A stretch of 35,208 nucleotides of DNA from Guillardia theta CCMP2712 (lineage: Eukaryota > Protista > Cryptophyta). The notes below the pieces were generated by a model. The model made no database searches, had not been told where the DNA came from, and was given only the letters and a program-made list of their open reading frames with translations. The DNA is taken from assembly GCF_000315625.1 (NCBI RefSeq), contig NW_005434396.1, positions 1 through 35,208 on the forward strand, in the 5' to 3' direction. Below, piece by piece: positions 3,882-23,151 of this stretch (the stretch's first letter is position 1; every line of letters begins with the position of its first letter). A program made the translations under genes and the position numbers.

Positions 3882-4454
3882 TTAGTTCAGCGTTGTTTCA
3901 CTCAACCATCTCATCTCAACTAACACCTCCACATGCTCCAGCGCCTCCTCCAGTAGCTCCCCGATCATTCCCTCCCTCCATACGTCCCTCCCTCCTCTTC
4001 CTCCTGCCCCTCTTCCTCCTGCCCCTCTCCCTCCGGCTCCCGTCTCCCTATCCTCCCCTCCCTCCCGACCCTTTTCTTGACCCTCTCCCTGCCCGCTCTG
4101 CAGTCCTCGTCCCGTCCTGTCGTACGGCCACCGCTTGATCCCCACCTCCTTGCACGCTCGCTTCAGCGCCGTCAGCGAGATCCCCTGCTCCCCCCGCACG
4201 TCAGCTCGCCGCCCCCGCCAAGCAAGAGAGGAGGAGAAGAAGGACGCGAGACTCACGAGGGTGTCGGCGGCGTCGGCCTGGCGGAGGGGGAGGAGGGGGG
4301 CGATGTCTTGGTAGGAGAGGTAGCGGACGGGCTTGCGGGGGAGGGCGAGGAGGGTGTGGGAGGAGGAGCGGCGGGGGACGATGCGGGCGACAGGAGGAGG
4401 GGGCAGAGGAGGCAGAGAGGAGGAGGAGGATGTCGCGTCAGGGGAGGATGCCAT
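3882..4454 (-). CDS. RWP-RK domain transcription factor, copy 1 (2 exons; intron 4185-4256)
   Basis: Removing the 72-nt GTGAGT..GCTGAC..CAG intron gives YLSYQDIAPLLPLRQADAADTL|GISLTALKRACKEVGIKRWPYDR, matching the RWP-RK pattern (LP..EAA..LG+S.T.LKR.CR..GI.RWP). C-terminal VWREGMIGELLEEALEHVE. Confidence 0.9.
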   Translation of the reverse strand: MASSPDATSSSSSLPPLPPPPVARIVPRRSSSHTLLALPRKPVRYLSYQDIAPLLPLRQADAADTLVSLASFFSSSLAWRGRRADVRGEQGISLTALKRACKEVGIKRWPYDRTGRGLQSGQGEGQEKGREGGEDRETGAGGRGAGGRGAGGRGGRDVWREGMIGELLEEALEHVEVLVEMRWLSETTLN

Positions 4455-4634
4455 AGTTTGATTGAATGCACACAGCGTGGGAGGGCGAAGGGTCAGATTG
4501 AACTAGACGAGGGGGGGGGGGACAGAGGAAGAGCAGGGAGAGGAGGAGGAAACTAGATGGGGGGAGCAGAAGAGTCGAGGAATAAAGTAGAGGAATAAAC
4601 TAGAAGAGATGGCTCTGTGACAACAATGTGCCAC

Positions 4635-4690
4635 AGGGTCAGGGGTATGGTCGAGTTACTCGAGGAGACAAGACTGAAATCGATCAGGTA
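4635..4690 (-). promoter_or_regulatory. Conserved upstream element A of RWP-RK copy 1
   Basis: AGGGTCAGGGGTATG..TTACTCGAGG..AAGACTGAAATCGATCAGGTA recurs upstream of copies 2 and 5 and, inverted, at 10327-10396. Regulatory role is inferred. Confidence 0.55.
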
Positions 4691-5197
4691 CGACCCCTGC
4701 CTTTCCACGACCTTTCACGATACCCCTGATGTGCCCCCAACTCCCCACCCTAGGGGCACAATCACGGGCTGAAGCCGTGCATTCTGGCCTACCCTACCGT
4801 GATGTTTTCAGTTCTGTCTCACTAAGTGAATCTCTTGTAGCTCGGACCTCTGAGCACCTGGACTGCTATACTGTAACAACCCCTCCCCGGGGCCCCGTGT
4901 CACGTTCCCGGCAGGAGCGCGAAGGGGTTAATGGCAGGACTGCGAGATTTCAGTCTTGTGGTCAATGTGAAAATGCAACAGGCAGGACCCTCGGGCTGCG
5001 AGAGCAGATGAGAGATAAGGCTGGCAAACATTGATGCATAGGCCACAGTAAAGATCTCGTGACGGTTACTCGTGACATTCTGCTGTAGTAAGATCGAAAG
5101 GCCGGGCCACTGCAGTGATGCCGCCGCGCTCGGGGTGTGGCCGGCGGTGGCGTACTAGCCAGGGCGCCCGGGCTCAGTCACTGTGTGCCGGGCTGTC

Positions 5198-5272
5198 GTG
5201 ACTGACTGACTCAGGCCTGATCGGACTGATTGACTGACTGACTGACTGACTGACTGACTGACTGACTGACTG
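5198..5272. repeat. (TGAC)n tetranucleotide microsatellite
   Basis: Visible tandem units. Confidence 0.9.
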
Positions 5273-6041
5273 CAGCCTTCAAGGCTTGTAGTCTTCAAGT
5301 AGTGCCACGGTGAGCGGAATCATCGAGTCCAAATGATCGGGAAGGCTTCCAGTGATCAGCTTCATCATTGACTTTTGAAAGTTGAGGTTTCTGCTTCAAA
5401 CTTGCCGCGGGGTAGGACTTCACTGCCGGGCAGTTGGATCGAACGGTCGGCAGGGTTCGGACTCGGACTCGACTCAGTGCAGTGATAGTCTTCCATCATC
5501 CTACACTGTCGCACAGGCCATACGGCAAGAAGAGAAAAGACAGTGACTCAGTGAGAACCAACCCTCATCCTGCCGACTGCTGTCCCCCAACTGGCAAACT
5601 TGACTGAGTAGTAGTAGCAATACAGTACGGTAGCGTCGAGCTCAATTAGGCTGATTGAAATCCAGTAGATCGAGTGCCTTCACAGCGATGATTGGATGCC
5701 TGACTTACTCCCCACCCCTCCCCCACCGTCATAATACTCGGATCAAGGCACCTCCGCTGGAACACATAGTACAGATGAAGGGTGGAGATATGAAGTTTAT
5801 TTGAGATGCAACACGACAGGTTCGTTGCATACTCAGAAGCCCTGGAACACCAGACCATTTCAAGTAGTTGTTGAGAAAGGACCATGTCATCACTTGCTGC
5901 TCACTCCCGCTCAATAAGATTCCTTCTTGCGGAGACTTGGGATCAATCACGGTCACAACAAAGAGCTCTGATACAGTCTTGAGGAAGCTGAGAGGATATA
6001 TGATCATCAAAGTGAAATAGTCATGTAATAACAGCCTCAAG

Positions 6042-6686
6042 CTACTTCGGTCCTCCATTGCTGTAACTTACCGCGTTCCTCCTCACTGCCACCTCCACAT
6101 GCTCCAGCGCCTCCTCCAGTAGCTCCCCAGCGCCTCCTTCCCTCCATTGCCCCCTTACCCCAGCCTCTTCTACACCCCCTCTCCTACCCCCTCTTGGTTT
6201 CCTGTCGTACGGCCACCGCTTGATCCCCACCTCCTTGCACGCTCGCTTCAGCGCCGTCAGCGAGATCCCCTGCTCCCCTCGTCGCACGTCAGCTCGCCGC
6301 CCCCGCCAAGCAAGAGAGGAGGAGAAGAAGAACGCGAGACTCACCAGAGTGTCGGCGGCGTCGGCCTGGCGGAGGGGGAGGAGGGGGGCGATGTCTTGGT
6401 AGGAGAGGTAGCGGACGGGCTTGCGGGGGAGGGCGAGGAGGGTGTGGGAGGAGGAGCGGCGGGGGACGACGCGGGCGATAGGAGGAGGGGGCAGAGGAGG
6501 CAAGGCTTGAGATGGATTGAGTGAAGGCAGCAATGATTCCGCGTGGTTAAGAGGAGAAGGAGATATGCACGGTGAGGATTGCAAGTAGGGAGAGGAGGAG
6601 CAGGAGGGACAGAAGGAGGAGGGAGAGGAGGGAGAGGAGGAGGGAGAGGAGGGAGAGGAGGAGGGAGAGGAGGAGGTGAAGGGCAT
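6042..6686 (-). CDS. RWP-RK domain transcription factor, copy 2 (intron 6270-6344)
   Basis: Same core (..GIKRWPYDRK), 75-nt intron at the same position, Ser/Pro-rich N-terminus, C-terminal QWREGGAGELLEEALEHVE. Confidence 0.9.
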   Translation of the reverse strand: MPFTSSSPSSSPSSPSSSPSSPSSFCPSCSSSPYLQSSPCISPSPLNHAESLLPSLNPSQALPPLPPPPIARVVPRRSSSHTLLALPRKPVRYLSYQDIAPLLPLRQADAADTLVSLAFFFSSSLAWRGRRADVRRGEQGISLTALKRACKEVGIKRWPYDRKPRGGRRGGVEEAGVRGQWREGGAGELLEEALEHVEVAVRRNAVSYSNGGPK

Positions 6687-6744
6687 GGAATGCCGTGATT
6701 GTGGACTTTATTACTGTGCGAAGATTGTCGGGGGAATATGAAGG

Positions 6745-6815
6745 TTTTGACTGCATGCAAGGGTCAGGGGTATGCTCGATTTACTCGAGGACGTAAGACT
6801 GAAATCGATCAGGTA
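6745..6815 (-). promoter_or_regulatory. Conserved upstream element A of RWP-RK copy 2
   Basis: ~70 nt matching the reverse complement of 10327-10396 with about 6 mismatches. Confidence 0.55.
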
Positions 6816-8345
6816 GCCCCACCCCCTCTTCAGTTCCGCCTCTCAATCTCTCCCCAGCGCACCCCGCCAAAGGGCTGGGCAGGCAGTTAAAACCAAGTTT
6901 TACGGCAAGGTAGACTAGCCGAACCGATGTTTGATCGATGCCTTTGTTGCACGTGAAGTTTATTGATCAACTCTCAAATTTATAGGGAAAGACAACAATC
7001 CTATCAAATTCGTACTCTTGATCTTCAAGACCAACTTCTTGTGCTCGTTGACCTTCTCAAAGACCAACTTGAATCGATTGGTAACGTTACCAACCTGCTC
7101 TTTGGAGCGACAATCCACTCCATCGGAATGATATTCTTTCGCGTCTTCCCCTCGATCAAATGTAGGTTTAGTGAGCACCCGAATCAGCATGCAAGAGTGT
7201 TGATGTAAATGTTGAGGTCAGTGTTGACATCCTTGCAAAAACATCAGGTGTTCAATGGTATGAGGCATCTGCACTTGTGTTGTTTACTACTACACAATCA
7301 GGGCAGGTTTTTTGCAAACACACCCTTCAACGGCAGATGTACCGTAACTCGCTTCTTCAATTCATGTGTTCATCATCAATTTCAACTGATACTTCTATCT
7401 GCTCTTTAGACTAGGTATCTTACAGATAAACTTGCAGCTGTCAAGATCTTCTCCTTGTTTTCATTCCGCACCCACGTCACTTGGCGATTGACAGGGCAAG
7501 AAGTTCAGTAATGTCGCAAACGGCAGCAGCAGTTTTTGCGGTCGTTACAGCAATCAATGTTCAAAGAGACCATTCTAGTTGTGCATCTAGCACCAAGAAT
7601 TCGATTTGTACAGTGTAAGACCTAGTCCATTGAAGTCATCGCAATGAAGCTGTATTGTATATAGCCAAGGGTATGAAGGAGCAACAGGGTAACGTATTGC
7701 AGCAGCTGGCTTCTAACTCAGCAACTTGTAGAAGAAAACTTGAGCATCTGCAGTCGCTCAGCTCAGCCTGACACCTTCGACGTCCTTGCTCGCCCTGACG
7801 CGGCTGCACTATTTAGCCCGCCATTCCACCAAAACAAAAAAAAAGAAAAAAAATTATTTTTGAACAAAAAAACAAGTGGGCAGCACCAGGATCTCACTGG
7901 CCGGCTTAACGCCGCTGCCACCCCCTCTCAGGGTCTGACCTGTGGCAGTTTCACTTAGAGCCTCGAGGCCGAAATCTCCTCACTCTCACCCCCTTCACAG
8001 CAGCACATCCCGTCGCAACTCGCGTGTGACTCAAGGGGAAAAATGGGGGTGGGTGGAATCACTCGCTCTGACTCCCCCTCCCAAGGGAGAGAAGCTCAAA
8101 CCTATAGGTGATTCACTTAGTGGAAGAAGACTGAAAACCCCGAGGTACAGGGTAGCATGTAAAACCTCGTTTCCAGAACCTTCAACACATGTATGTACCT
8201 CCTTCCCTGGCTCACGTTCCTCCATCTCGACTCTCTCTCTCTCCCCCCTCCTGTTCTTGCTCTCCCTCCTCCCATAGAAACCTCCTCCTCCTTACTGCCC
8301 TCCTCTCCCCTCTCCTCCCCCGGGCCTCGCTCCTTGCTAGCTCCC

Positions 8346-8910
8346 ATGCCCTCCTCGACACCTACCATCGAACACTTGCCTCCTCTGCCCCCTCCTCCTG
8401 TCGCCCGCGTCGTCCCCCGCCGCTCCTCCTCCCACACCCTCCTCGCCCTCCCCCGCAAGCCCGTCCGCTACCTCTCCTACCAAGACATCGCCCCCCTCCT
8501 CCCCCTCCGCCAGGCCGACGCCGCCGACACCCTCGTGAGTCTCGCCTCCTCCCTCTCCTCTTCTTGCTTGGCGGGGGCGGCGAGCTGACGTGCGGGGGGA
8601 GCAGGGGATCTCGCTGACGGCGCTGAAGCGAGCGTGCAAGGAGGTGGGGATCAAGCGGTGGCCGTATGACAGGACGGGACGAGGACTGGAGAGCGGAACA
8701 GACAAGGGGGTGGGGGAGGGGGAGGGTCAGCGAGAGGGTCGGGAGGGAGGGGAGGATAGGGAGACGGGGGCAGGAGGGAGCGGAGCAGGAGCAGGATCAG
8801 GATCAGGATCAGGAGGAGGGAGGGACGTATGGAGGGAGGGGATGATCGGGAAGCTACTGGAGGAGGCGTTGGAGCATGTGGAGGGCCACGTAAGGCATCA
8901 AACATGGTGA
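8346..8910 (+). CDS. RWP-RK domain transcription factor, copy 3 (intron 8535-8604; alternative upstream ATG 8193)
   Basis: A 70-nt intron containing an in-frame stop joins ORFs 8193-8588 and 8590-8910 into the RWP-RK domain. C-terminal VWREGMIGKLLEEALEHVEG. Confidence 0.9.
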
Positions 8911-9415
8911 TGTTTCATGTTTCTCTGCTTTTGCCCTGCTCCTTCTGCTCAGTTGCCCTCGCTGAGCTTGATCTTGTTAACGAGGCTGCAAGCTTCGTTC
9001 CCTTGTTGATATTGCGTCTGCTTTCCAAGAACAATCGCAGCCTGATGCTTGTCTTTCACATCTTACAAGAGATTTCTGACTGATTCAATAAAGAATGAAT
9101 CTGCTAAAAGAAATTGTACACCAACACCTTTGATTTTCCATCTTGTACATTTGGAAGATCGTCGCAGCGTTGGCAAAAATATCAACAAGAGTGCATGACA
9201 CACTGAAAAGCCTTGATCAAGTCGGTTTGACTTGTTGTATAAAAGTGTGATGGCATCTGTTTACGTCGAGAGTTCTTGACTTGAGCTCACTTGTTGTATA
9301 TGTTCCCGCGCCTCAGTCTCTAGATGCTCATGCGATTTGTGGGTCTTGTTTTCCTCTGGTCGTGCGAAGGCATGAAGTACTATGACAAGAGCAACATCCA
9401 GCGACGCAAGCCTTG

Positions 9416-9536
9416 ACGTGTTGCAAGAAGCAAACCTGTGTGACTTCCACGTGTTGCAAGAAGTCGCAAGCCTGCTGTGTTGTGACGTGTTGCAAGAAGC
9501 AGATGTGAAAATTGTACTGTGACGTGTTGCAAGGAG
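9416..9536. repeat. Four 15-bp direct repeats ACGTGTTGCAAG(A/G)AG with 18-22-bp variable spacers
   Basis: Repeats at 9416, 9449, 9485 and 9522. Confidence 0.85.
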
Positions 9537-9699
9537 CTGAAGGAGCTTGCTCTAAGGAAGCTGTAGGTCGACCCCACAGCAGTCTCATCCGCTTCGCAGG
9601 GAGCTTCCTTGGAATCAGAGTCTCCGCAGCTGGAAAGAAGGGAAGGATGAGGACTGGAAGGGGTGTTAGGACGAGGGGGGCAGGGGGAGTAGGGGAACG

Positions 9700-9789
9700 C
9701 AGCAGGAGCAGCAGTAGCAGCAGGCACAGGACAAGGAAAAGGAGCAGGAGCAGGAGCAGGAAAAGGCGCAGGAGCAGGAGCACTTGAAA

Positions 9790-9849
<60 letters not shown>

Positions 9850-10156
9850 TTGGAGCAGGACGTTGTCTCAGGGAGCAACGGTTTGGAATCCCCTCCTTGT
9901 ACGGCAGGGGATAGGTAGACGTGGGATGGTGGGGGGTCAACCTGGTTGATTTCAGTCTTACGTCCTCAAGCAGGAGCGCTTGAAAGAGCAGGAGCAGGGG
10001 CAGGAGCACGAGCAGGAGCACCAGCAGGAGCACCAGCAGGAGCACCAGCAGGAGCAGGCGCGGCACAGAAGAAGGTGCAGGCGCAGGCGCAGGCGCAGGA
10101 GAAGGAGCAGGAGCAGGAGCAGGAGCAGCAGCAGCAGCAGCAGCAGGAGCAGAAGA

Positions 10157-10236
<80 letters not shown>

Positions 10237-10357
10237 TTGGAGCAGGACGTTGTCTCAGGGAGCAACGGTTTGGAATCCCCTCCTTGTACGGCAGGGGATA
10301 GGTAGACGTGGGATGGTGGGGGGTCAACCTGGTTGATTTCAGTCTTACGTCCTCAAG
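9700..10357. repeat. (GCAGGA)n microsatellite block containing a direct duplication of a 122-bp unique segment (9849-9970 = 10236-10357)
   Basis: Identical segments 387 bp apart, each preceded by GAGCAG repeats. Confidence 0.9.
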
Positions 10358-10396
10358 TAAATTGAGCATACCTCTGACCCTTGAATGCAGTCAAAA
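10327..10396 (+). promoter_or_regulatory. Orphan copy of RWP-RK upstream element A, oriented for a plus-strand gene
   Basis: Reverse complement of 6745-6815; nearest downstream RWP-RK sequence is the fragment at 11613. Confidence 0.5.
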
Positions 10397-11612
10397 TAGC
10401 CCCGCATGCTAGGGTGCCGTACCGGTACTTTGTATGCTGTAACATACCGGTAGTGGAACCGCAACAGTCAAACGGAGAGTTACGTTCGAGTCGACCTGAA
10501 GCTCGGTGCGCATCAACCCGTGGCTCCTGTATGTCGCGTGCTTCCCATTGTGAGACAAGAGGATTGATGCCTCAGCAGCTCAGGAATGTCACGACCTTCA
10601 AACTTGAGGGATGGGGGTGGAGGCTTCATGGACCGTGAGGGCAGTGGAAGCGTTTTGAATTCGAACATGCGATGCGAATGTCAGTGTTCATGGTGAGGAC
10701 TCCTATGGTGAACGGTTTTCATGAGGTAAACTTGTATAATGGCAATCAATCAATCAATCATTGGCTTCGCCTCGACGCATGGTTGACAAGATTTAGCTAC
10801 ACAATGGATACCGCCTTCTCAGGTGGGTTGTACAATAAGGCAAGCTTCCTATTCATCCTGGATTCGTAAAAGAACCGAGTCTGACACCATCACGACGGAT
10901 CTGAGTAGAAGAGAGTTGAGCTGAGGTGTGTGGACATCGTTGCTCAGAAGTTTAGCAACAGATATTCGGTACATGTGACGGTTTGTAATGTGCATCTTAA
11001 CTTTGTTCCTGTGTTCATTGTAATTAGAACATGACTAATGTAATTGGACCATGTAATACCTCGTGCGCATTACGCTGTTCTTTATCCTGCTTGTACTTGC
11101 CTGCAACATCACCTACAACAGCACAAGCTAACGTCACACACACCTTGCAAGCGCTCGTTCTGCGCAAGCATTTCAGTTTCACTACTAATCCAACACTTCC
11201 CAAAATGAATTAAAAAGAGAATAAAACTCTAAAAACTAAAGGTCATGGTACAAATTATTGACTGATTTTAGAAGGAATCTCGATTGCTTTTCCCCTACAT
11301 CACAACGTCTCAAAATCAGACTCAGGTTAAAACCGCCGCGTAACGACTAGGACATCTTTGGCGCCATGAGACCCCCCAGGGGGTTAGCCCTCCCTTTGAC
11401 TAAAACATTTGTACCAGGAGCTAATCTTCAGGTCTTTATTGAAGGTCTCCGGTAAACATCCATGTAACGAGAAGCGTTTTCAAAGAGGAGATGTAAGAGA
11501 GGTCAGTGGGCTGTAAGACCTGCGGCACCACAAGGATGCAGTCAGCCGCGTGAGCACGGTACTCCAGCAAGTGTTCCAGGTTTCTTCGCACAGCAATGCC
11601 ATGATGATGATT

Positions 11613-11755
11613 CCCCCCTCCTCCCCCTCCGCCAGGCCGACGCCGCCGACACTCTCGTGAGTCTCGCGTCCTCCCTCTCCTCCTCTTCTTGCTTGGAAGC
11701 GAGCGTGCGAGGAGGTGGGGATCAAGCGGTGGCCGTACGACAGGACGGGACGAGG
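11613..11755 (+). pseudogene. Truncated RWP-RK pseudogene (copy 4)
   Basis: Begins mid exon 1 (PLLPLRQADAADTL) and keeps the GTGAGT donor at 11657. A ~54-nt deletion relative to copy 3 removes the branch point, acceptor and GISLTAL. KRACEEVGIKRWPYDR remains; no ELLEEAL tail. Confidence 0.85.
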
Positions 11756-12246
11756 CCCCCGACTGGAGGGGGGGAGGGGGGGGGAGGGAGGGAGGGGGGA
11801 GGCGAAGAGACGGGACGGAAGACAGGCAGAGTCAGCGTCTGCTTGCCTGGCATTGATTGTACTTTAATCCAGAAGGATCCGGACTTGCGGGTCCCGAGTC
11901 ATCGAATACTCAGAATTTGAGCGAATTCGTGTCTGCTGTCTAATCTCCTGCATTCTCCTTGAATTTTGTGACAGTTTTTTAATCTTGTGTAGTTTGCATC
12001 AACGTCACTGTACGACTGCTATCTTCTCTATCTCGATCTCGCTCATCCCCGTGCGATTTGCTGAGCGACGGATCTGTTTGCGTTGTGTACCCATCACTGA
12101 TAGTCTGACCTTGCAGAGATGAGTGCAGACATAAGGGCAGACGACGAAAGAAGAAGAATGGTAAAAGGAAGATTCACAGTCTGAACTAATGATTCAATAT
12201 CACACAACCCAAAAAGAAAAATTTTCAAGTTCTCACTCTCTTTTCG

Positions 12247-12344
12247 TCAGCTCGTCACATGCTCCAGCGCCTCCTCCAGTAGCTCACTTGACATTCCCTC
12301 CCTCCATACGCCTCCCACTCCCTCTGCTCCTGCTCCTGCTCCTG

Positions 12345-12383
<39 letters not shown>

Positions 12384-12799
12384 ATCCTGCTCGTGCGCCT
12401 CTCAGATCCCCTCCTGACCTTCCTTCTCCCTGCCTCCCCTCCCCCTCCCCTTCTGCCCCTGCCTCCTCCCCCCTTCCACCCTCCAGTCCTCGTCCCGTCC
12501 TGCCGTACGGCCACCGCTTGATCCCCACCTCCTTGCACGCTCGCTTCAGCGCCGTCAGCGAGATCCCCTGCTCCCCCCGCACGTCAGCTCGCTGCCCCCG
12601 CCAAGCAAGAAGAGGAGAGGGAGGAGGCGAGACTCACGAGGGTGTCGGCGGCGTCGGCCTGGCGGAGGGGGAGGAGGGGGGCGATGTCTTGGTAGGAGAG
12701 GTAGCGGACGGGCTTGCGGGGGAGGGCGAGGAGGGTGTGGGAGGAGGAGCGGCGGGGGACGACGCGAGCAGTGGAAGGCTGAGGTGATGAAGAGGACAT
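12247..12799 (-). CDS. RWP-RK domain transcription factor, copy 5 (intron 12568-12637)
   Basis: 70-nt intron; core ..GIKRWPYGR; Gly/Ala repeat linker; C-terminal VWREGMSSELLEEALEHVTS. Confidence 0.88.
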
Positions 12800-12845
12800 G
12801 GGAGTAGCAGATCAGCTACTAAGATTGCTCAACTTTCTACTGGGC

Positions 12846-12894
12846 AGGGTCAGAGGTATGCTTTATTTACTTGAGAGACAAGACTGACATCGAT
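12846..12894 (-). promoter_or_regulatory. Conserved upstream element A of RWP-RK copy 5
   Basis: AGGGTCAGAGGTATGCTTTATTTACTTGAGAGACAAGACTGACATCGAT, ~47 nt upstream of the ATG. Confidence 0.5.
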
Positions 12895-13668
12895 GATCTT
12901 TGGGCCACCCCTCACCAAACTTGAACTTTCTTCACCCCCCCCCCATCCCCCCCCCACTATACACCTCACAGGGGGGAACAGGCTTTATCTGCGAGTCGTG
13001 TGCTGCTGTACCTCGCGGTTTTAAGTCTTGAAGCACTAAGAAAGGTCAAGGTACAAGCTTCCCCTGCGGCACCTGACTGCCCTCTTCTATGGGTCGTAGA
13101 GTGGGGAGTTGTTGGAGGTGGGGGGTGAGAGGGGGAGGCTTCTGGTCTTGGGCCTCTAAGTAAAACGTGTAGGGGTCAGCACCCGAGCCTTTCACGACAG
13201 GGGGATAAGACCTTGCTGAACCCACTTGTTCTCACATGAAGGGTTGTGGGGGAACAAGGTTTTTACGTAGTAGCTTGCCTCTCACGGTTCTGCTTCTTAC
13301 ACATGCATGTATGGAGTTCTATTCAAACCTACACTTGCAAGTAGACTCAGAAACGAACAACCTCCTTGACTATCATGAAGACGTAGGTCGTGAATGAGAA
13401 AAGAATCTCTTTGTAAAACAGATACTTGAACATTCAAAGATGTCTAGTGCATGTTTGATAAAGATGCAGGCAATAGCAAGCTGGATTTTTCCGCTTTACT
13501 TAAAATCGCAGACAAGCAACAAACCTAAATTCAACGCAAATCTATGCGACACGCCATCTATCTACCTACAGTTTTTCCTTCATTTTGTGTTCTTTCGTAA
13601 GACTTTCTAATCAAAGGCTTTCTGATATTCTTCTTTGAAAATCTCCACGCTTGTACCCTCTTTCCTTC

Positions 13669-14145
13669 TTATCTTGAACCAACTTTCTTTAGTGAAGTCT
13701 CCAAGTACTCCAGCGCCTCCTCCAGTAGCTCCCGATCCAGACACTCTCTCCACACTGCCTTTCGTCCCTCGTCTTCCCCATGTCCTCCTTGCCTGCAAGT
13801 AACCCTCGTCCCGTCCTGCCGTACGGCCACCGCTTGATCCCCACCTCCTTGCACGCTCGCTTCAGCGCCGTCAGCGAGATCCCCTGCTCCCCCCGCACGT
13901 CAGCTCGCCGCCCCCGCCAAGCAAGAAGAGGAGAGACAGGAGGACGCGAGACTCACGAGGGTGTCGGCGGCGTCGGCCTGGCGGAGGGGGAGGAGGGGGG
14001 CGATGTCTTGGTAGGAGAGGTAGCGGACGGGCTTGCGGGGGAGGGCGAGGAGGGTCTGGGAGGAGGAGCGGCGGGGGACGACGCGGGCGGTATGTTGATG
14101 GTGTCGGGAAGGGGAAGGGGAGGGGAGGAGAGGGGAGGAGGACAT
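13669..14145 (-). CDS. RWP-RK domain gene, copy 6 (intron 13884-13956), frameshifted after the domain; possible pseudogene; alternative ATG 14256
   Basis: Intact core ..GIKRWPYGR. The family tail VWRECLDRELLEEALEYLE lies in a different frame (stop 13669) from the domain frame (stop 13689). Confidence 0.75.
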
Positions 14146-15454
14146 CGGATGTGCAGGCAGGGAGGAGGAGGTTACGAGACTGAGCAGGAGAGGAGCGGCC
14201 GAGGATGGAGTCCACAGGGTCCTGAACGGGTAGCAGAGGAAAGGGGGAACAGGCATTTTTGGTGTCAGTGTACCGGAGTGATTTCAGTCTTGTCTCACTA
14301 TGTGAAAATCGCCTACATTGTACCTCCCTCTTTCGCCATTCTTGTCCACCTAAGGTGCCCAGGGTTTTAAACGCACGAGTTCTCAAGGAGCAGCTTGGAT
14401 CTATACACCTGTAGTACGAACATGTCAGTCTTGTGCCTCTAAGTAAAAATGCACTTGGTCGAGCCCTCACGATCGGCTGACCTGTAAGACTGTTTTGTAT
14501 CCAGTCTGCTTCTCCTCCTCCTCCTATGGCTAGCAGGAGCCTTGTGCAGGAGGAGGTTTGGTCTCCTTCCCAGGACATCTGCCTCAGGGGAGGCAAGAGG
14601 CGCAAACAACAGCTCAAAGCAAGTGATGATGAGCTTGACTGAACGTGGTTCAACATTGTTAGTATTTTGGCTGACTAGCTTGCTACACATGGGTCATCTT
14701 ATCGTTAGTACAGTGTTCCTTGTACATCCAGGACCAACACGGATTGTGAAATCTCCCTGCCCCGCTAAGTTATCTCCTTGCAGTGCCGTTCTATGCCCCT
14801 ACGAAGAGGAGAAGCAAATCATTGCCGGAGAAACAACGAAATCATGAGAGTGAAATCGTAAACGACTAAGATATTATCAAGGATGGAACATACGCCCTGA
14901 AGCACGGTAGGTGGCCTTCTCAGGATTAGACTTAGAAGAAGCTGCAGGATGATTGCCTGTGAGGTTCTGTTGGCTGTCAGCACGGTACCGTACAAGTGTA
15001 TGTTCACAGTTACACCGCTCGGACATTCTTGAAGCGATGCTACTAGCGCCCATGCCTGCTGTAAGCTTGTCAAAGATCTCTGATCAAAACCCATGGATTG
15101 TGAGTGCAGTGCTGATCACTCGAGCGGGGATTGAGAAACAAGCAATGCAAAAGGAAGAAGATCAGAGGAGAGGGGTTGGGAGTTTGAGAGACAAGCGCGA
15201 GTATCTAAATTCATTTGAACGAAGTCAACAAGTAATTGAACAAGGATATTCACATGCCATCCAGATCCCAATAGATCCGCACAGAGAAATTCCGAAAGCC
15301 ACACGATCAACAAATTCTCCTCATCTTCAATCGACGACAAAACCATCTTGTTGTTAACACAAAACCACCACAACCAACCCTCTCGAAGAGTCTTGAACAT
15401 GCCCACATGATATTCTAGGGTGAAACTGCCTACTAGGCAGCCGCATCACTTGCC

Positions 15455-15982
15455 TTATGAGCCCTCCACATGCCTCATCGCCTCCTCCAGTAGCCCCCAA
15501 GACTCGCAGCACCTCACGTTCCATCGCCATGTCCTCATCGTCTGCTCGACTGCGCAAGGGATCGCAGGAGGTTCGGGCTCGTGGGCTTCATCGTTGATCT
15601 GCTGCTGTTGCTGCGCCTTCTTGGCGGCGACATGACTTTGTACCGTCCTATCGTACGGCCACCGCTTGATCCCCACCTCCTTGCACGCTCGCTTCAGCGC
15701 CGTCAGCGAGATCCCCTGCTCCCCCCGCACGTCAGCTCGCCGCCCCCGCCAAGCAAGAGAGGAGGAGAAGAAGGACGCGAGACTCACGAGGGTGTCGGCG
15801 GCGTCGGCCTGGCGGAGGGGGAGGAGGGGGGCGATGTCTTGGTAGGAGAGGTAGCGGACGGGCTTCTTCGGATGAGAGAGGAGTTGAGAGGAGGGGCGGC
15901 GGGGGACGACGCGGGCGGTTGGAGAGGCTGGTGGCAAATCGCTTTGGAGTTGCTTGTGAAGCAAACTAGAAGACGATAACAT
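15455..15982 (-). CDS. RWP-RK domain transcription factor, copy 7 (intron 15716-15787)
   Basis: 72-nt intron; same core; divergent linker; tail TWRW..GLLEEAMRHVEGS. Confidence 0.88.
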   Translation of the reverse strand: MLSSSSLLHKQLQSDLPPASPTARVVPRRPSSQLLSHPKKPVRYLSYQDIAPLLPLRQADAADTLVSLASFFSSSLAWRGRRADVRGEQGISLTALKRACKEVGIKRWPYDRTVQSHVAAKKAQQQQQINDEAHEPEPPAIPCAVEQTMRTWRWNVRCCESWGLLEEAMRHVEGS

Positions 15983-16027
15983 TTGAAGTACCTTAGGTAC
16001 CAGGAGGAATCTGAATCGGATCTACAA

Positions 16028-16087
16028 GGAGGAGGAGGAGGAGGAGGAGGAGGAGGAGGAGGAGGAGGAGGAGGAGGAGGAGGAGGA
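16028..16087. repeat. (GGA)n microsatellite
   Basis: Visible. Confidence 0.95.
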
Positions 16088-16870
16088 ACTACTATCACGA
16101 CCAACCCTATGACCACTACTACCACCTTTCTACCACCACTCCTAAAGTAGGAACAGCACGACCCTGCGCTTGACTAGCCGGCTAAACTGGGAATGAAGGA
16201 GAGGGGAAGAGATTTCAGTTGTGGGCTTCAATTGAATTCCTTGTAGGTCTGACCCTGAGCTTCCGACGGGTTTGTAAGAGGGCCATCCATCGCAATCTCC
16301 AGAACGAATGCTGACACCTCGTTGTAATAACTGTCACGGATACCACAAGATACGGTTTTCACAGCCACATCTGTGGGTGGGTGGTCGGATATCCAAGGGG
16401 AGGGTGGGTAGGGTGTTACGACTGTTAGTGACATGACTCGGGACAATAACTTGATATATAGCTCAAATTTTATGTGCAATATATATGATGCATCGCAACT
16501 GAAGAGCTCGTTGTGTTGTCAGCTACAGAGTTGCCATCTTGTAGTTTCACCGTCGATCGACGAACAGATCGAAGTCAGGTGTCGATGTTGAGATCGAATG
16601 TGAACCTCGGCAAAGCATCGATAACGTTGCCCATCCTGATATTCTTGAGCATTGTGAGTATGAACCTTGTGAGGGTGAACGAGTGGACTGAAGAAAGTGA
16701 TGATGATGTCAAGATATTTAAAGTCGACTTCATTTCAAGAAAATTCACCATCGATACAAAACTTCTAATCATCAAATGCAGAATTCTCAAGTCCAGTCCT
16801 AACCATTCGATCCATCAGCAATACAAGGTTTCGCCCAACATTTTCTCGTCGCCCTCGCTCTCTCATCCTT

Positions 16871-17382
16871 CTATCTACCTCCTACATGCTTCAGCGCCTC
16901 CTCCAGCAGCTCTTCAGTGCCCCCTCCCCCTCTCCAAGTCTTATTCCCCTCTTGCTTCTCTTTTTCACCTCCATTGCTGACTTTCCTCTCCTCGTCCGCG
17001 TCCACCTCTCTCGCCTCCATCGCCCTGCTTGCCTGCCCGCCCCTCCTCCCGTACGGCCAGCTCTTGATCCCGACCTGCCTGCACGCCCTCTTGAAGGCTG
17101 ACAGCGACAACCCCTGAACCATACCCTCCGTCATCTCCTCCATACCCCACCTTGCACCCCGCCCCACCCTTTCCCTCTGACAACCCCTCCTTAACATGGA
17201 GAACTTACCAGGCGATCGGCGGCATCGGCCTGGCGGAGGGGGAGGAGGGGCGCGATATCTTGGTAGGAGAGGTAGAGGGCGTGCTTGCGGGGGAGGGCGA
17301 GGAGGGTCTGGGAGGAGGAGCGACGAGGGATGATACGGGAGATGCAAGAAACTTTAGGAGAATCAGTTGAGTTGGAGGACAT
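16871..17382 (-). CDS. Divergent RWP-RK domain transcription factor, copy 8 (intron 17114-17208)
   Basis: 95-nt GTAAGT..CAG intron at the same position; ..QADAADRL|GLSLSAFKRACRQVGIKSWPYGRR; tail TWRGGGGTEELLEEALKHVGGR. Confidence 0.85.
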
Positions 17383-19385: not shown

Positions 19386-21478
19386 ATGTTGACAAGTCTG
19401 CGGAGCAAGGCAGTCATAATCTCAGGTTCTGATCTATCTTCTCTAATCTTCATCAGCTCTTGTCTCTACCTGTTCATCAAAGATCTTCTTTCCTGATCTT
19501 TTTTCCTGACCTTCTTTCCTGCACCTTCTCCCTGCTAGTCTCCTGCCTGGCGACCTCCACCTTGATCAGTTTGCTCTACGATGTTCTCCGCAGATCGAAG
19601 ATTTACTCTGCCGATCTGTAAGGCTCTTTCCTCCTTGTTTCTGACATGCCTTGAAATGCGGCATGGCAGGGAAAAGGAGAAGAAAGGAAAGCGGATCCCC
19701 TACCTGACGAGCTTCCTCAAGCTTGACCTCCAGAACCTGCGCAAGGCGTTGAGGTGAGGGAAGGGGAGGGAGGGAGGGAGGCAGGCAGGGAGGCAGGCAG
19801 GCAGGGAGGGAGGAGAGGTTGTTTGGTTACTTTGCTTTCATAAGACGGTAGGAGAAGCTCTCCGGGAAACTGGAGGAATCTTTGCCTTCTCCTCTCCTGC
19901 CGGGAAGCCGTTTGTGATTGTGAACAACGAAGACATCTTGAAAGACATCCTAGTTCATCATGTTGCAAGGTAAACATGCGACGTTGACATGTGTGTTGTT
20001 AAGATTGCGTTGTTCTCCTCACTTGGTTTCTCCCGTCCAGGTACAAGAAGCAGCATGCCAACGGTATTCTGGAGCTGTTCAGGAAGACAACACTGCCCAA
20101 CAGTCAGTCTCCTGCATGGCGTCCAGTTCATAAGGTGACATGTGATGAACATGGAAGATTGTTGTATTTGAAGATTATGAAAGAAACAGAAAATAGCAAA
20201 GACTGATGGCAAAGAGGAGAGAGAAAGTATGATGATTATTTTTGATGTGATGATATGGATTGTGGGGCCGATGATGGTGGAAAAGAAGAAGATGATGATT
20301 GTACACTGACTTTCTCAGAGGAGGAGCAGGAGCAGGAGCAGGGGAATGGGGAGAGAGGAGGAGAAGAAGGAGGTCAAGGAAGGAGAGGAGGAGAAGGAGG
20401 TCAAGGAAGGAGAGTAGGAGAAGAAGGAGGAGCAGGAGAAGGAGGAGCAGGAGGAGCAGGAGGAGCAGGAGAAGGAGGAGCAGGAGGAGCAGGAGGAGCA
20501 GGAGGAGGAATCTGAAGGGAGAAGAGGAGTAGGAGTGATAGTAAGAAGGGATGGAAACATTAGAGGGCGAGATGTGGTACCGATGAGTACTGAGTATCTT
20601 GATATTTCCTTGCGCTACATCGCAGCTAGCAAGCAGGATGTGCTTTCATTCTGTGGAGAAGGTGAAAAACATTTGTCTTGGTGTTCTTTTCCTCCTCTCA
20701 CCCCAGTGTGCAGGAACAAAAACTTTTGTCGCTCGTCGACGAACTTTGTGTGATGATCAAGAAGGAAGAAGACAACGTAAGACCACGTTAGACAACGACA
20801 ACGTTCAAGAGCATCCTTCCTCCGACCCCCCTCCTTCTCCTCTCCTTCTTCGTCCTTTCCTCGTTCTCTCCTGCTCCTTCTCCTCTCCTTCTTCGTCCTT
20901 TCCTCCTTCTCTCCTCCTTTCCTCTTCCTCCTCTTCCTCCACCTCTTCTACTCTTTATTCTGCTCCCTCTCCCTCCATTCATCTTCTTCTCTTGCAATCC
21001 TCTGACTCTCTTTGCAGCGCAAAGTCAATCTCAGCGCCCTGCTCACGGACTGGTACTGGAAGGTGACAAGCTTCCAGCTCCAGCTCGTGCTCCTGCTCCT
21101 GCTGCTCCTGCTGCTCCTGCTGCTCCTTCTCCTCTAAATCTCTCCCAGGTTACTCTCTTTCTGGTCCTCGGCGAAGTTCCACAAGGATTCCCTGATGCCT
21201 ACCGGTAAATCTCGTTACTCCCCCACAAACCCCTCCTGTCCTGTCGTCTCCTCTCCTCTTCTTTTCTCTCCTCTCCTCTCCTCTCCTCTCCTCTCCTTTG
21301 CTCTACTCGTAACTGTTTCATAGGGACGCCTGGCTTGCCTGCATCGATCGCTTGAGTTCTCCTCTCATCAACTCCTTCTTTTTCTACAAGTTCATCCCAA
21401 CCCCTGCAAACCTCTGGTACAAAACGATGCTGGTGCTGGTGCTGGTGCTGCTGGTGCTGCTGGTGCTGCTGGTGCTGG

Positions 21479-21522
<44 letters not shown>

Positions 21523-23151
21523 CTGCTGGTGCTGCTGGTGCTGGTGCTGGTGCTGCTGCTGGTGCTGCTGCTGGTGCTGCTGCCTGGTGCTGCTGCNNNN
21601 NNNNNNNNNNNNNNNNNNNNNNNNNNNNNNNNNNNNNNNNNNNNNNNNNNNNNNNNNNNNNNNNNNNNNNNNNNNNNNNNNNNNNNNNNNNNNNNNTTGC
21701 TTCTTATCGCTGATTCTGCGACACAACAGGTACAGGTACACAACATGGAAGTTCAGAAAGATGATGATGAAGAAGATGGACGATGTAACCTTGTCTTGCT
21801 CCTCTCTTCGTTTCACTCCCTCCTCGTCCTCGTCCTGTCCTGCCCCTCCTCTCCTCTCCTCTCCTCTCCTCTCCTCTCCGATTTTGTCCTCTGCTCTGCT
21901 CTGCTCTGCTCTGCTCTGCTCTGCTCACCTCACCTCTCCTCTCCTCTCCTCTCCTCTCCTCTCCTCTCCTCTCCTCACCTCACTCTTCACTTCTCTGTTC
22001 TTCTCACCTTTCACTGCTCATCTCAGGACAACAAGTGTGACTGGAGTGTGGTTCACATGATGCTTCAAGACAAGGAGCTGAACTTGGAGACTAGCGAGGA
22101 TCGACTGGAGGTGAGGGAGGGCGACCGAGAGAAAGATTGAAGGATAAGAAGGGAGGAAGGAGCAACGATGACAGGAAGAAGGAGCAGGCAGGAGCAAGGA
22201 GAGGAGAGGGGGGAGAGGGAAGAGGACGAGGACAACGAGGAGGACGAGGAGGCGCAGGAGGACCGGACAAGCAAGAGAAGGACGAGGAGGAGCAAGAAGA
22301 GGTGGAGCAGGAGGAGAATTCGGAGGAGCAGGAGCAGGAGCAGGTGCAGGAGCAGGAGCAGGCGCAGGAGCAGGAGCAGGAGCAGGCGCAGGCGCAGGCG
22401 CAGGCGCAGGGGGGGAGCTGATGATGTACAGGTGGCGATGGAGTTTCTGTTCACCGGAACAACTTCAGTGACGAGCACGATCTCTTGGCTGATGTGGCAC
22501 CTGAGCGACAACATCAAGTTGCAGGTGGGAAAAATGAGATGGAAAGGAGAACTTGAAGATGACGACGATGCAGGACAAGGTTGCACAGGAATGTATCGGC
22601 TACCAGGCAAACTCTACTGAAGAGAGTTTTGTGAGGTGAGAGAAGAGGGGAGAGGAGGAGGAGTGGAGGAGGAGGAGAGAGATAGAAGATAGGAGAGCGA
22701 GGAGGGAAGAGGGAGATAGAAGATAGGAGAGAGGAGATAGGAGATAGGAGAGAAGAGGGGGAGGGGGGGGGGGAGGGAAGGGTAGAGGAGCGGAGACGAG
22801 GAGCTGAGAGGAGTTGAGGAGGAGGGGAGGGGAGGAGAGGAAAGGAGACAGCCGCAAGAGAGGAAAGCAATAGGAAAAGGGAGAAAGAGGAGGAAACAAA
22901 TGTAACAAATTTTTATCTTGTGTTCTCATTCATTTCCTTGTGTTGTTATCAGGGATCTCAACAAGCTCCAGCTGCTAGAAGTTTGTCTCAAAGAAACGCT
23001 GAGGATGTACAGCCCAATTCACATCGGTCGGATGTGCAAACATGTAAGAGAAGATGAGAAATTTGCAAAGAGATTTGATGGATGATAGGACGATGTTGCC
23101 GGAGGGTATTCGATACCTCAAGGAGCGGATATCATGACAAATATGTGGTAA

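What the first reader, a model, noticed from the sequence alone, without database searches (positions are those of the whole stretch)
3882..17382. Array of eight minimal RWP-RK transcription-factor genes with a shared, apparently novel architecture
Seen: eight copies roughly 2 kb apart, six on the minus strand and two on the plus. Complete copies consist of a short Ser/Pro N-terminus, a conserved ARVVPRRSSS(H/Q)TLLALPRKPVRYLSYQDI lead-in, the RWP-RK domain split by one intron, a hypervariable Gly/Glu linker and a W..(E)LLEEALEHV helix. No GAF-like or PB1 domain is visible. Known: single-domain RWP-RK proteins (RKD, volvocine MID) control gamete or sex identity, while NIN/NLP proteins control nitrate responses. 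Inference: a lineage-specific, actively turning-over TF cluster with intact, frameshifted and deleted members, possibly a nitrogen- or sexual-cycle switch locus.
Basis: partly seen in the sequence, partly recalled or inferred. Interest (0 to 1): 0.85.

Follow-up and report, generated by a model that had tools for sequence, protein, structure and literature searches.

The report
Cluster of small RWP-RK regulator genes
This stretch of the alga Guillardia theta holds eight neighbouring copies of a small RWP-RK transcription-factor gene whose DNA-binding part is kept almost identical by copying between neighbours; it is real, but it is one of dozens of such clusters in this genome and its role is unknown.

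Summary
There are eight copies, six on the minus strand and two on the plus. Six are intact (c1, c2, c3, c5, c7, c8). One (c6) has its C-terminal helix out of frame. One (c4) is a truncated relic. Exon 2 alone passes Pfam's RWP-RK cut-off in six copies. A phase-0 GT..AG intron of 70-95 nt splits the domain. For c5 the splice is seen in RNA contigs of three studies.

The genome is Guillardia theta CCMP2712. It has at least 150 RWP-RK matches above Pfam's cut-off out of 571 candidates, many in arrays. At least 45 other loci share this lead-in, intron position and domain.

The architecture is not new. Annotated G. theta paralogues and Hanusia phi transcripts have it, including the C-terminal helix.

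A cassette of about 285 nt (lead-in, intron, domain) is 94-96% identical among six copies, the intron included. The flanks are no more alike than shuffled sequence. That points to interlocus gene conversion. The linkers are short tandem repeats.

The eight genes have no model in the protein libraries searched.

A nitrogen or sexual role is untested.

This scan found the same kind of array and the same conversion pattern earlier on other DNA of this genome.

The parts
3882..4454 (-). c1: intact gene. Exon 1 is 4257-4454, the intron 4185-4256 (72 nt, in frame) and exon 2 is 3882-4184.
   Evidence: ORF. PF02042 scores 34.6 bits against a cut-off of 29.3. Intron borders. The 3' end is not checked by RNA.
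6042..6686 (-). c2: intact gene. Exon 1 is 6345-6686, the intron 6270-6344 (75 nt) and exon 2 is 6042-6269. It has a Ser/Pro tandem-repeat N-terminus and a short linker.
   Evidence: (33.7 bits).
8193..8910 (+). c3: intact gene. Exon 1 is 8193-8534, the intron 8535-8604 (70 nt, shifts the frame if retained) and exon 2 is 8605-8910.
   Evidence: (33.0 bits).
11600..11825 (+). c4: relic. Only the last 14 or so codons of exon 1, the 5' half of the intron and a truncated exon 2 core remain. The rest is deleted or replaced.
   Evidence: Alignment. No acceptor found. tblastn. PF02042 scores only 20.5 bits.
12247..12799 (-). c5: intact, transcribed and spliced gene. Exon 1 is 12638-12799, the intron 12568-12637 (70 nt) and exon 2 is 12247-12567.
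   Evidence: The splice joint is seen in contigs of RNA runs X1, X2 and X3, from three studies. PF02042 scores 32.5 bits.
11970..12246 (-). c5 3' untranslated region. Its intron is 12186-12236 (51 nt), with an alternative acceptor giving 12181-12236 (56 nt).
   Evidence: Joints and contig pieces. Sequence.
13689..14256 (-). c6: the domain is intact but the C-terminal helix is out of frame. Exon 1 is 13957-14256, the intron 13884-13956 (73 nt) and exon 2 is 13689-13883. The helix lies in the frame of ORF 13669-13854.
   Evidence: (33.9 bits). No RNA contig over it.
15455..15982 (-). c7: intact gene. Exon 1 is 15788-15982, the intron 15716-15787 (72 nt, identical to that of c1) and exon 2 is 15455-15715. 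The linker is not Gly-rich and the helix variant is LLEEAMRHV.
   Evidence: (35.5 bits). No RNA contig.
16871..17382 (-). c8: intact but the most diverged copy. Exon 1 is 17209-17382, the intron 17114-17208 (95 nt, unrelated to the other introns) and exon 2 is 16871-17113. Its motif is SWPYGR.
   Evidence: PF02042 scores 21.9-23.8 bits, below the cut-off.

Best explanation
This is a birth-and-death cluster of small, RKD-like (single-domain) RWP-RK DNA-binding proteins of the cryptophyte Guillardia theta. It is one local array of a family of several hundred genes. Each protein is about 150-215 residues. It has a variable Ser/Pro N-terminus and a conserved lead-in that is modelled as a two-strand sheet packed on the three-helix RWP-RK fold. 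A disordered linker follows, encoded by short tandem repeats, and then a short acidic amphipathic C-terminal helix. The copies arose by old local duplications and inversions, and their flanks have diverged beyond recognition. Interlocus gene conversion keeps overwriting a cassette of about 285 nt (lead-in, intron, domain). As a result six copies encode nearly the same DNA-binding head, while the tails change by replication slippage. Shown here: the copies, the intron and its splicing in c5, the Pfam membership, the family size and the conversion pattern. Inferred: DNA binding, all six heads recognising the same site, and the C-terminal helix being an activation or partner-binding motif. The biological role is unknown.
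For: Eight copies and no more in the window. PF02042 is above its cut-off on exon 2 of six copies. Spliced paralogues with the same layout hit positions 2-43 or 2-47 of the 49-position model at 53-59 bits. The intron position is shared by all 16 paralogous loci fetched. The c5 splice is seen in three studies. Identity among six copies is 96% in the exon 1 part, 94% in the intron and 96% in the exon 2 part. The flanks are 59-64% identical, against 58-62% for shuffled controls. GC is 0.66-0.75 in the cassette and 0.44-0.60 outside it. Synonymous differences are 0-3 of about 38 sites and 0-2 of about 19 sites. Seven of 15 informative site pairs fail the four-gamete test. c8 is a mosaic: exon 1 part 86% identical, intron unrelated, exon 2 part 74%. 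The linkers are tandem repeats. The genome has at least 150 matches over the cut-off out of 571 candidates. At least 45 other loci span lead-in to domain. The genome's identity comes from an exact paralogue and its contig length. The AlphaFold model of spliced paralogue P0054 has pLDDT 90-95 over residues 31-70 and about 80 over the C-terminal helix. Its only fold matches are weak ones to small helix-turn-helix DNA-binding domains.
Against: Only c5 is shown to be transcribed. The RK of the RWPxRK signature is missing here (RWPY[D/G]R; c8 has SWPYGR), so DNA binding like that of canonical members is assumed, not shown. The structural evidence comes from a paralogue proxy, not from these proteins. 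The fold matches are weak (Z at most 3.9). Six informative sites is a small base for the four-gamete test.
Confidence: 0.8

Rival explanations
1. The near-identity of the cassette reflects recent duplication of the genes, not gene conversion between old copies.
For: c1/c3/c5 are alignable over about 510 nt and c2/c6 over about 400 nt. Short upstream pieces are shared by c1 and c2 (D9). Some duplications are therefore younger than others.
Against: Similarity stops at common, sharp borders, about -133 and +150 from the donor site, in nearly all pairs. The adjacent coding and non-coding flanks are at the level of shuffled sequence. Cassette identity across the flank-defined subgroups (c1-c6 97.6%, c3-c6 97.6%) is higher than over the longer alignments within them. 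Variant sites are mosaic.
Confidence: 0.1
2. The array is mostly decaying: apart from c5 the copies are unexpressed pseudogenes kept looking intact by conversion from a functional donor.
For: No RNA contigs over c6, c7 or c8 in four runs. One copy is frameshifted and one is deleted. No gene model for any of the eight exists in the protein libraries searched.
Against: Six copies keep open frames through the unconverted, repeat-rich N-termini and linkers up to the conserved C-terminal helix. c8 against the others shows fewer non-synonymous than synonymous changes per site: 0.085 against 0.22 in exon 1 and 0.175 against 0.44 in exon 2. Contigs drop weakly expressed genes, so their absence proves little.
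Confidence: 0.15
3. The cassette is conserved at the DNA level because the DNA or RNA itself has a function, for example through the C-rich to G-rich switch or an antisense transcript, rather than through conversion.
For: GC skew on the sense strand switches from -0.59 in exon 1 to +0.35 in exon 2. Long antisense ORFs overlie each copy.
Against: The c8 intron and the paralogues' introns differ freely in sequence and length. Paralogues elsewhere keep the protein at only 35-60% identity, with diverged DNA. No structure or antisense RNA was tested.
Confidence: 0.03

Closest known systems
Annotated small RWP-RK proteins of Guillardia theta CCMP2712 (GUITHDRAFT_152912 / EKX44596.1, GUITHDRAFT_151252, GUITHDRAFT_118109) and Hanusia phi transcripts (UniRef A0A7S0F1T5)
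   Same: The same layout: an xRIxPRR lead-in, an RWP-RK domain with WPYxR, a variable linker and a C-terminal LLEEAxxHV helix. The intron sits at the same place in the genomic paralogues.
   Different: They are only about 35-55% identical to the proteins of this array. The eight genes here have no model in the libraries searched.
Plant RKD and volvocine MID / VSR1 RWP-RK regulators of gamete identity (PMC10629530)
   Same: The RWP-RK domain is the only recognisable domain, as in RKD and MID, with no GAF or PB1. Precedent exists for RWP-RK factors acting through homo- and heterodimers.
   Different: No orthology has been shown. The canonical RWPxRK and the helix that directly follows it are replaced here by WPYxR and a distant helix. 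VSR1's dimerisation domain is a 261-residue region with no counterpart here. Nothing links this array to sex.
NIN / NLP / NIT2 nitrate-response RWP-RK factors
   Same: The RWP-RK domain family (PF02042).
   Different: No GAF-like or PB1 domain. The proteins are about four to five times shorter.
Other RWP-RK arrays of this genome with gene-converted DNA-binding cassettes
   Same: Tandem or inverted arrays of small RWP-RK genes in which a domain cassette of 170-290 nt is nearly identical while the flanks have diverged.
   Different: This is another subfamily and another contig. Here the converted tract includes an intron, which makes the case against protein-level selection direct.

Membership tests
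RWP-RK domain family (Pfam PF02042) | Profile match at or above the curated cut-off (29.3 bits) | tested here: met
   Exon 2 alone scores 32.5-35.5 bits in c1, c2, c3, c5, c6 and c7. c8 scores 21.9-23.8 bits and c4 20.5 bits, both below the cut-off.
RWP-RK domain family (Pfam PF02042) | The N-terminal half of the domain (model positions 1-22) is present, encoded by exon 1 | tested here: inconclusive
   The exon 1 peptides alone give no Pfam hit. They do align column for column with spliced paralogues whose hits span positions 2-43 or 2-47 at 53-59 bits. The joined protein of this array was not scored, because joining exons was left out.
RWP-RK domain family (Pfam PF02042) | The signature motif R-W-P-x-R-K | tested here: not met
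   The copies read RWPYDR or RWPYGR, and c8 reads SWPYGR. Canonical RWP[FHY]RK genes exist elsewhere in the same genome. The array therefore belongs to a derived WPYxR branch.
RKD-type (single-domain) RWP-RK proteins | No GAF-like and no PB1 domain; a short protein | tested here: met
   No other Pfam family at E up to 1. Exon lengths give proteins of about 150-215 residues.
RKD-type (single-domain) RWP-RK proteins | Groups with plant RKD or volvocine MID in a phylogeny of the domain | not tested
NIN-like proteins (NLP / NIT2) | An N-terminal GAF-like domain and (for NLP) a C-terminal PB1 domain | tested here: not met
   No such Pfam hits in any copy.
Concerted evolution by interlocus gene conversion | A tract with silent sites and intron as alike as replacement sites, sharp borders, unrelated flanks and mosaic variants | tested here: met

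The most novel reading that the evidence does not exclude
The hundreds of arrayed WPYxR-type mini RWP-RK genes, this array among them, could form a repertoire that shares DNA-binding heads but has fast-changing disordered tails and a common C-terminal docking helix. Cryptophytes might use it to switch life-cycle or mating states, or nutrient programmes, by competition or pairing among members. This would parallel the MID/VSR1 logic of green algae.
Probability: 0.08. Interest if true: 0.75.

Novelty: new member of a known kind. Interest (0 to 1): 0.35.

Why it matters
Cryptophyte transcription control and sexuality are almost unstudied. A family of several hundred small RWP-RK genes would be among the largest transcription-factor expansions in this alga. 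In the paper library searched, only one preprint mentions RWP-RK genes in a cryptophyte, counting 56 in Rhodomonas salina. This array adds eight genes with no model in the protein libraries searched, a verified gene structure, and a clean case of conversion that includes an intron. By itself it does not answer any open question.

Tried and rejected
- Word-indexed protein searches with the c1 reading frame, whole and restricted to residues 20-118, found nothing. An exhaustive phmmer search with c7 gave only weak hits, with E no better than 5e-10. Close models of these genes are therefore absent from those libraries.
No Pfam score, fold or search exists for a spliced protein of this array. Public spliced paralogues (P0054, P0002, P0023) served as proxies.
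- Fold searches of the proxy model against the PDB gave only weak matches to helix-turn-helix domains (Foldseek E at least 1.1, VIA-align Z at most 3.9). A profile search of PDB sequences found no solved relative.
- A homodimer prediction for the proxy returned no verdict. It is not evidence either way.
- I looked for a second small intron that would restore the frame in c6. By hand reading of the sequence, the only GT..AG candidates in the linker are too short or have a length that is a multiple of 3. I therefore read c6 as frameshifted.
- ORFs in the rest of the window gave no Pfam families. A helicase-like impression at 33.5-34.3 kb was not supported.
Full report
WHAT IS THERE

A tblastn scan of the whole 35,208-nt window with the two exon peptides of copy c3 finds eight copies, all between 3.9 and 17.4 kb.
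- c1: 3882-4454(-)
- c2: 6042-6686(-)
- c3: 8193-8910(+)
- c4: about 11600-11825(+)
- c5: 12247-12799(-)
- c6: 13689-14256(-)
- c7: 15455-15982(-)
- c8: 16871-17382(-)

Spacing between the copies is 1.0-3.1 kb. The window is a whole small contig (C278) of an 87.1-Mb, 669-contig assembly.

The organism is Guillardia theta CCMP2712. A paralogous locus that I fetched from contig C39 (595,616 nt) encodes exactly EKX44596.1 (GUITHDRAFT_152912), and that protein is recorded on a contig of the same length.

GENE STRUCTURE

The DNA alignment and a motif scan place a GT..AG intron at one phase-0 position in seven copies. It lies between the codon for the Leu of ...ADAADTL and the Gly of GISLTALK. That is in the middle of the RWP-RK domain.
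- The intron lengths are 72, 75, 70, 70, 73, 72 and 95 nt.
- Length changes that are not multiples of three occur only in this segment. That alone argues for an intron.
- In c1, c2 and c7 the intron happens to be in frame, which is why they appear as single ORFs.

Direct proof exists for c5. Contigs of three RNA data sets from three studies (X1, X2, X3) skip 70 nt with CT..AC ends on the plus strand, exactly at 12568-12637. They extend into c5-specific flanks with no mismatches. The same contigs show a second intron, 10 nt after the stop codon. It spans 12186-12236, with an alternative acceptor 5 nt further on. The 3' untranslated region reaches at least 11970.

No contigs covered c6, c7 or c8. 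A single 283-nt contig lies at 13284-13566. Reads could be laid only once, so c1-c3 were not tested. Their 3' ends are therefore ORF-based only.

State of the copies:
- c1, c2, c3, c5, c7 and c8 have open exons from an ATG to the conserved C-terminal block.
- c6 has an intact domain, but its ELLEEALEYLE block lies in another frame (ORFs 13689-13898 and 13669-13854). I found no plausible frame-restoring intron.
- c4 keeps only the last codons of exon 1, half of the intron and a truncated exon 2 core.

FAMILY MEMBERSHIP

Exon 2 alone scores 32.5-35.5 bits on Pfam RWP-RK (PF02042, cut-off 29.3) in c1, c2, c3, c5, c6 and c7. It matches model positions 23-44. c8 (21.9-23.8 bits) and c4 (20.5 bits) fall below the cut-off.

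Instead I used public spliced relatives with the same layout. P0054 (GUITHDRAFT_151252), P0002 (Hanusia phi) and P0023 hit positions 2-43 or 2-47 at 53-59 bits. The exon 1 peptides of the array align column for column with their N-terminal halves.

The name-giving RK is not kept. The copies read RWPYDR or RWPYGR, and c8 reads SWPYGR. The same genome also holds canonical genes with RWP[FHY]RK followed directly by a helix. The arrayed small genes elsewhere carry WPYxR or WPYxK. The array thus belongs to a derived branch of the family. No GAF, PB1 or other Pfam domain is present.

THE ARCHITECTURE IS NOT PRIVATE TO THIS LOCUS

Searching the genome with the c1 frame gives at least 45 loci on about 30 other contigs that align from the lead-in through the domain. 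All 16 loci that I fetched have the intron at the same place, and several carry it in frame. All 16 have WPY in the domain.

Two kinds of C-terminal motif occur among them. One is the LLEEALEHV type of this array. The other is a W(I/L)xWY type.

Library proteins from G. theta and from Hanusia phi show the full layout in spliced form. One G. theta / Hanusia pair is 75% identical. The layout therefore predates the split of those two genera.

Genome-wide, the Pfam model finds 571 candidates. All 150 that were scored lie above the cut-off, and many sit in tight arrays, for example seven at a spacing of about 1.5 kb on C2. The half-domain hits of this window are not even among those 150.

CONCERTED EVOLUTION

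Pairwise BLASTN shows similarity confined to a tract from about -133 to +150 around the donor site. The borders are the same in nearly all pairs.

Among c1, c2, c3, c5, c6 and c7:

| Segment | Mean identity | Shuffled control |
|---|---|---|
| Exon 1 part of the tract | 96% | 68% |
| Intron | 94% | 58% |
| Exon 2 part of the tract | 96% | 62% |
| 300 nt upstream | 61% | 59% |
| 200 nt downstream | 64% | 62% |
| Next 300 nt downstream | 59% | 58% |

Further observations:
- Synonymous differences are 0-3 of about 38 sites and 0-2 of about 19 sites.
- Because the intron and the silent sites are as alike as the replacement sites, selection on the protein cannot explain the pattern.
- Flank similarity defines subgroups (c1/c3/c5 and c2/c6). 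Cassette identity across subgroups is as high as 97.6%.
- Seven of 15 pairs of informative sites fail the four-gamete test.
- c8 is a mosaic: its exon 1 part is 86% identical to the others, its intron is unrelated, and its exon 2 part is 74% identical.
- The tract is GC-rich (0.66-0.75 against 0.44-0.60). This fits GC-biased conversion but does not prove it.

The variable N-termini and linkers are short tandem repeats of period 3-21. Replication slippage explains their hypervariability.

LIKELY WORKING

An AlphaFold2 model of the spliced paralogue P0054, built with an alignment that included the array's exon peptides as separate rows, has mean pLDDT 72.8. pLDDT is 90-95 over residues 31-70.
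- Two short strands (the xRIx of the lead-in, and the stretch just before the domain) pair with each other and precede three helices.
- The linker has low confidence.
- The C-terminal helix (133-145) is at about 80.

Searches against the PDB give only weak matches. All are to small helix-turn-helix DNA-binding domains such as Fis and the NtrC DNA-binding domain (Z at most 3.9). No solved sequence relative exists in the PDB copy searched.

I infer a DNA-binding head whose fold includes the conserved lead-in, a disordered spacer, and an acidic amphipathic helix that could be an activation or docking motif. A homodimer prediction gave no verdict. The published model for volvocine VSR1 and MID shows that RWP-RK factors can act through homo- and heterodimers (PMC10629530), but nothing here ties this array to that system.

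LITERATURE

In the library searched, only two papers mention both RWP-RK and Guillardia, and four mention RWP-RK with cryptophytes. The only substantive statement is a count of 56 RWP-RK genes in Rhodomonas salina, with a remark that sex in cryptophytes is speculative. The size and arrayed organisation of the G. theta family thus seem undescribed in print, although many paralogues are auto-annotated as RWP-RK proteins.

EARLIER NOTES OF THIS SCAN

Notes on other DNA of this genome already describe such arrays and the conversion of the domain cassette. My tests on this window agree with them.

VERDICT

This is a real, partly expressed gene cluster and a clean example of a known evolutionary process. 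It is a new member of a known kind. A nitrogen or sexual role remains speculation.

Noticed in passing
window 4670-4681(+), 4946-4957(-), 6795-6806(+), 8127-8138(+), 9948-9959(-), 10335-10346(-), 12880-12891(+), 14280-14291(-): The 12-mer AAGACTGAAATC occurs 8 times (at most 1 mismatch) against 0.31 expected. Most sites lie 25-500 nt upstream of RWP-RK copies c1, c2, c3, c5 and c6, in either orientation. A 15-mer version with at most 1 mismatch gives 26 matches in the genome, four of them in this window. It is a possible shared promoter element or the remnant of an old duplication unit.
   Followed up: partly
window 12181-12236 (-): An intron in the c5 3' untranslated region, 10 nt after the stop codon, has two acceptors 5 nt apart (51 or 56 nt removed). 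They are seen in different RNA data sets.
   Followed up: partly
window 13284-13566: A 283-nt contig from run X1 (kind only guessed to be RNA by the tool) lies between c5 and c6 with no ORF of note. It could be a 3' untranslated exon of c6 or a separate transcript.
   Followed up: no
window 9380-10369: A 269-nt direct repeat (9702-9970 and 10089-10357, 91% identical) sits within long hexamer arrays (AGCAGG/GAGCAG, 25 and 42 copies). A 329-codon low-complexity Ala/Pro-rich ORF lies on the minus strand. There is no meaningful Pfam hit.
   Followed up: partly
window 8403-8716 and 12456-12769: The c3 and c5 cassettes form a 314-nt inverted repeat, 96% complementary, around a 3.7-kb segment. It could mediate inversion. 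No evidence of flipping was sought.
   Followed up: no
each copy, e.g. window 4077-4556(+), 13780-14370(+): Long antisense ORFs overlie every copy. The sense strand switches from C-rich (GC skew -0.59) in exon 1 to G-rich (+0.35 to +0.54) from exon 2 onward. The cause is unexplained.
   Followed up: partly
window about 21400-21700: Runs of X in the ORF translations here suggest an assembly gap of N. The surrounding 18-35 kb is dominated by homopolymeric-codon and microsatellite tracts with no Pfam-recognisable ORFs.
   Followed up: no
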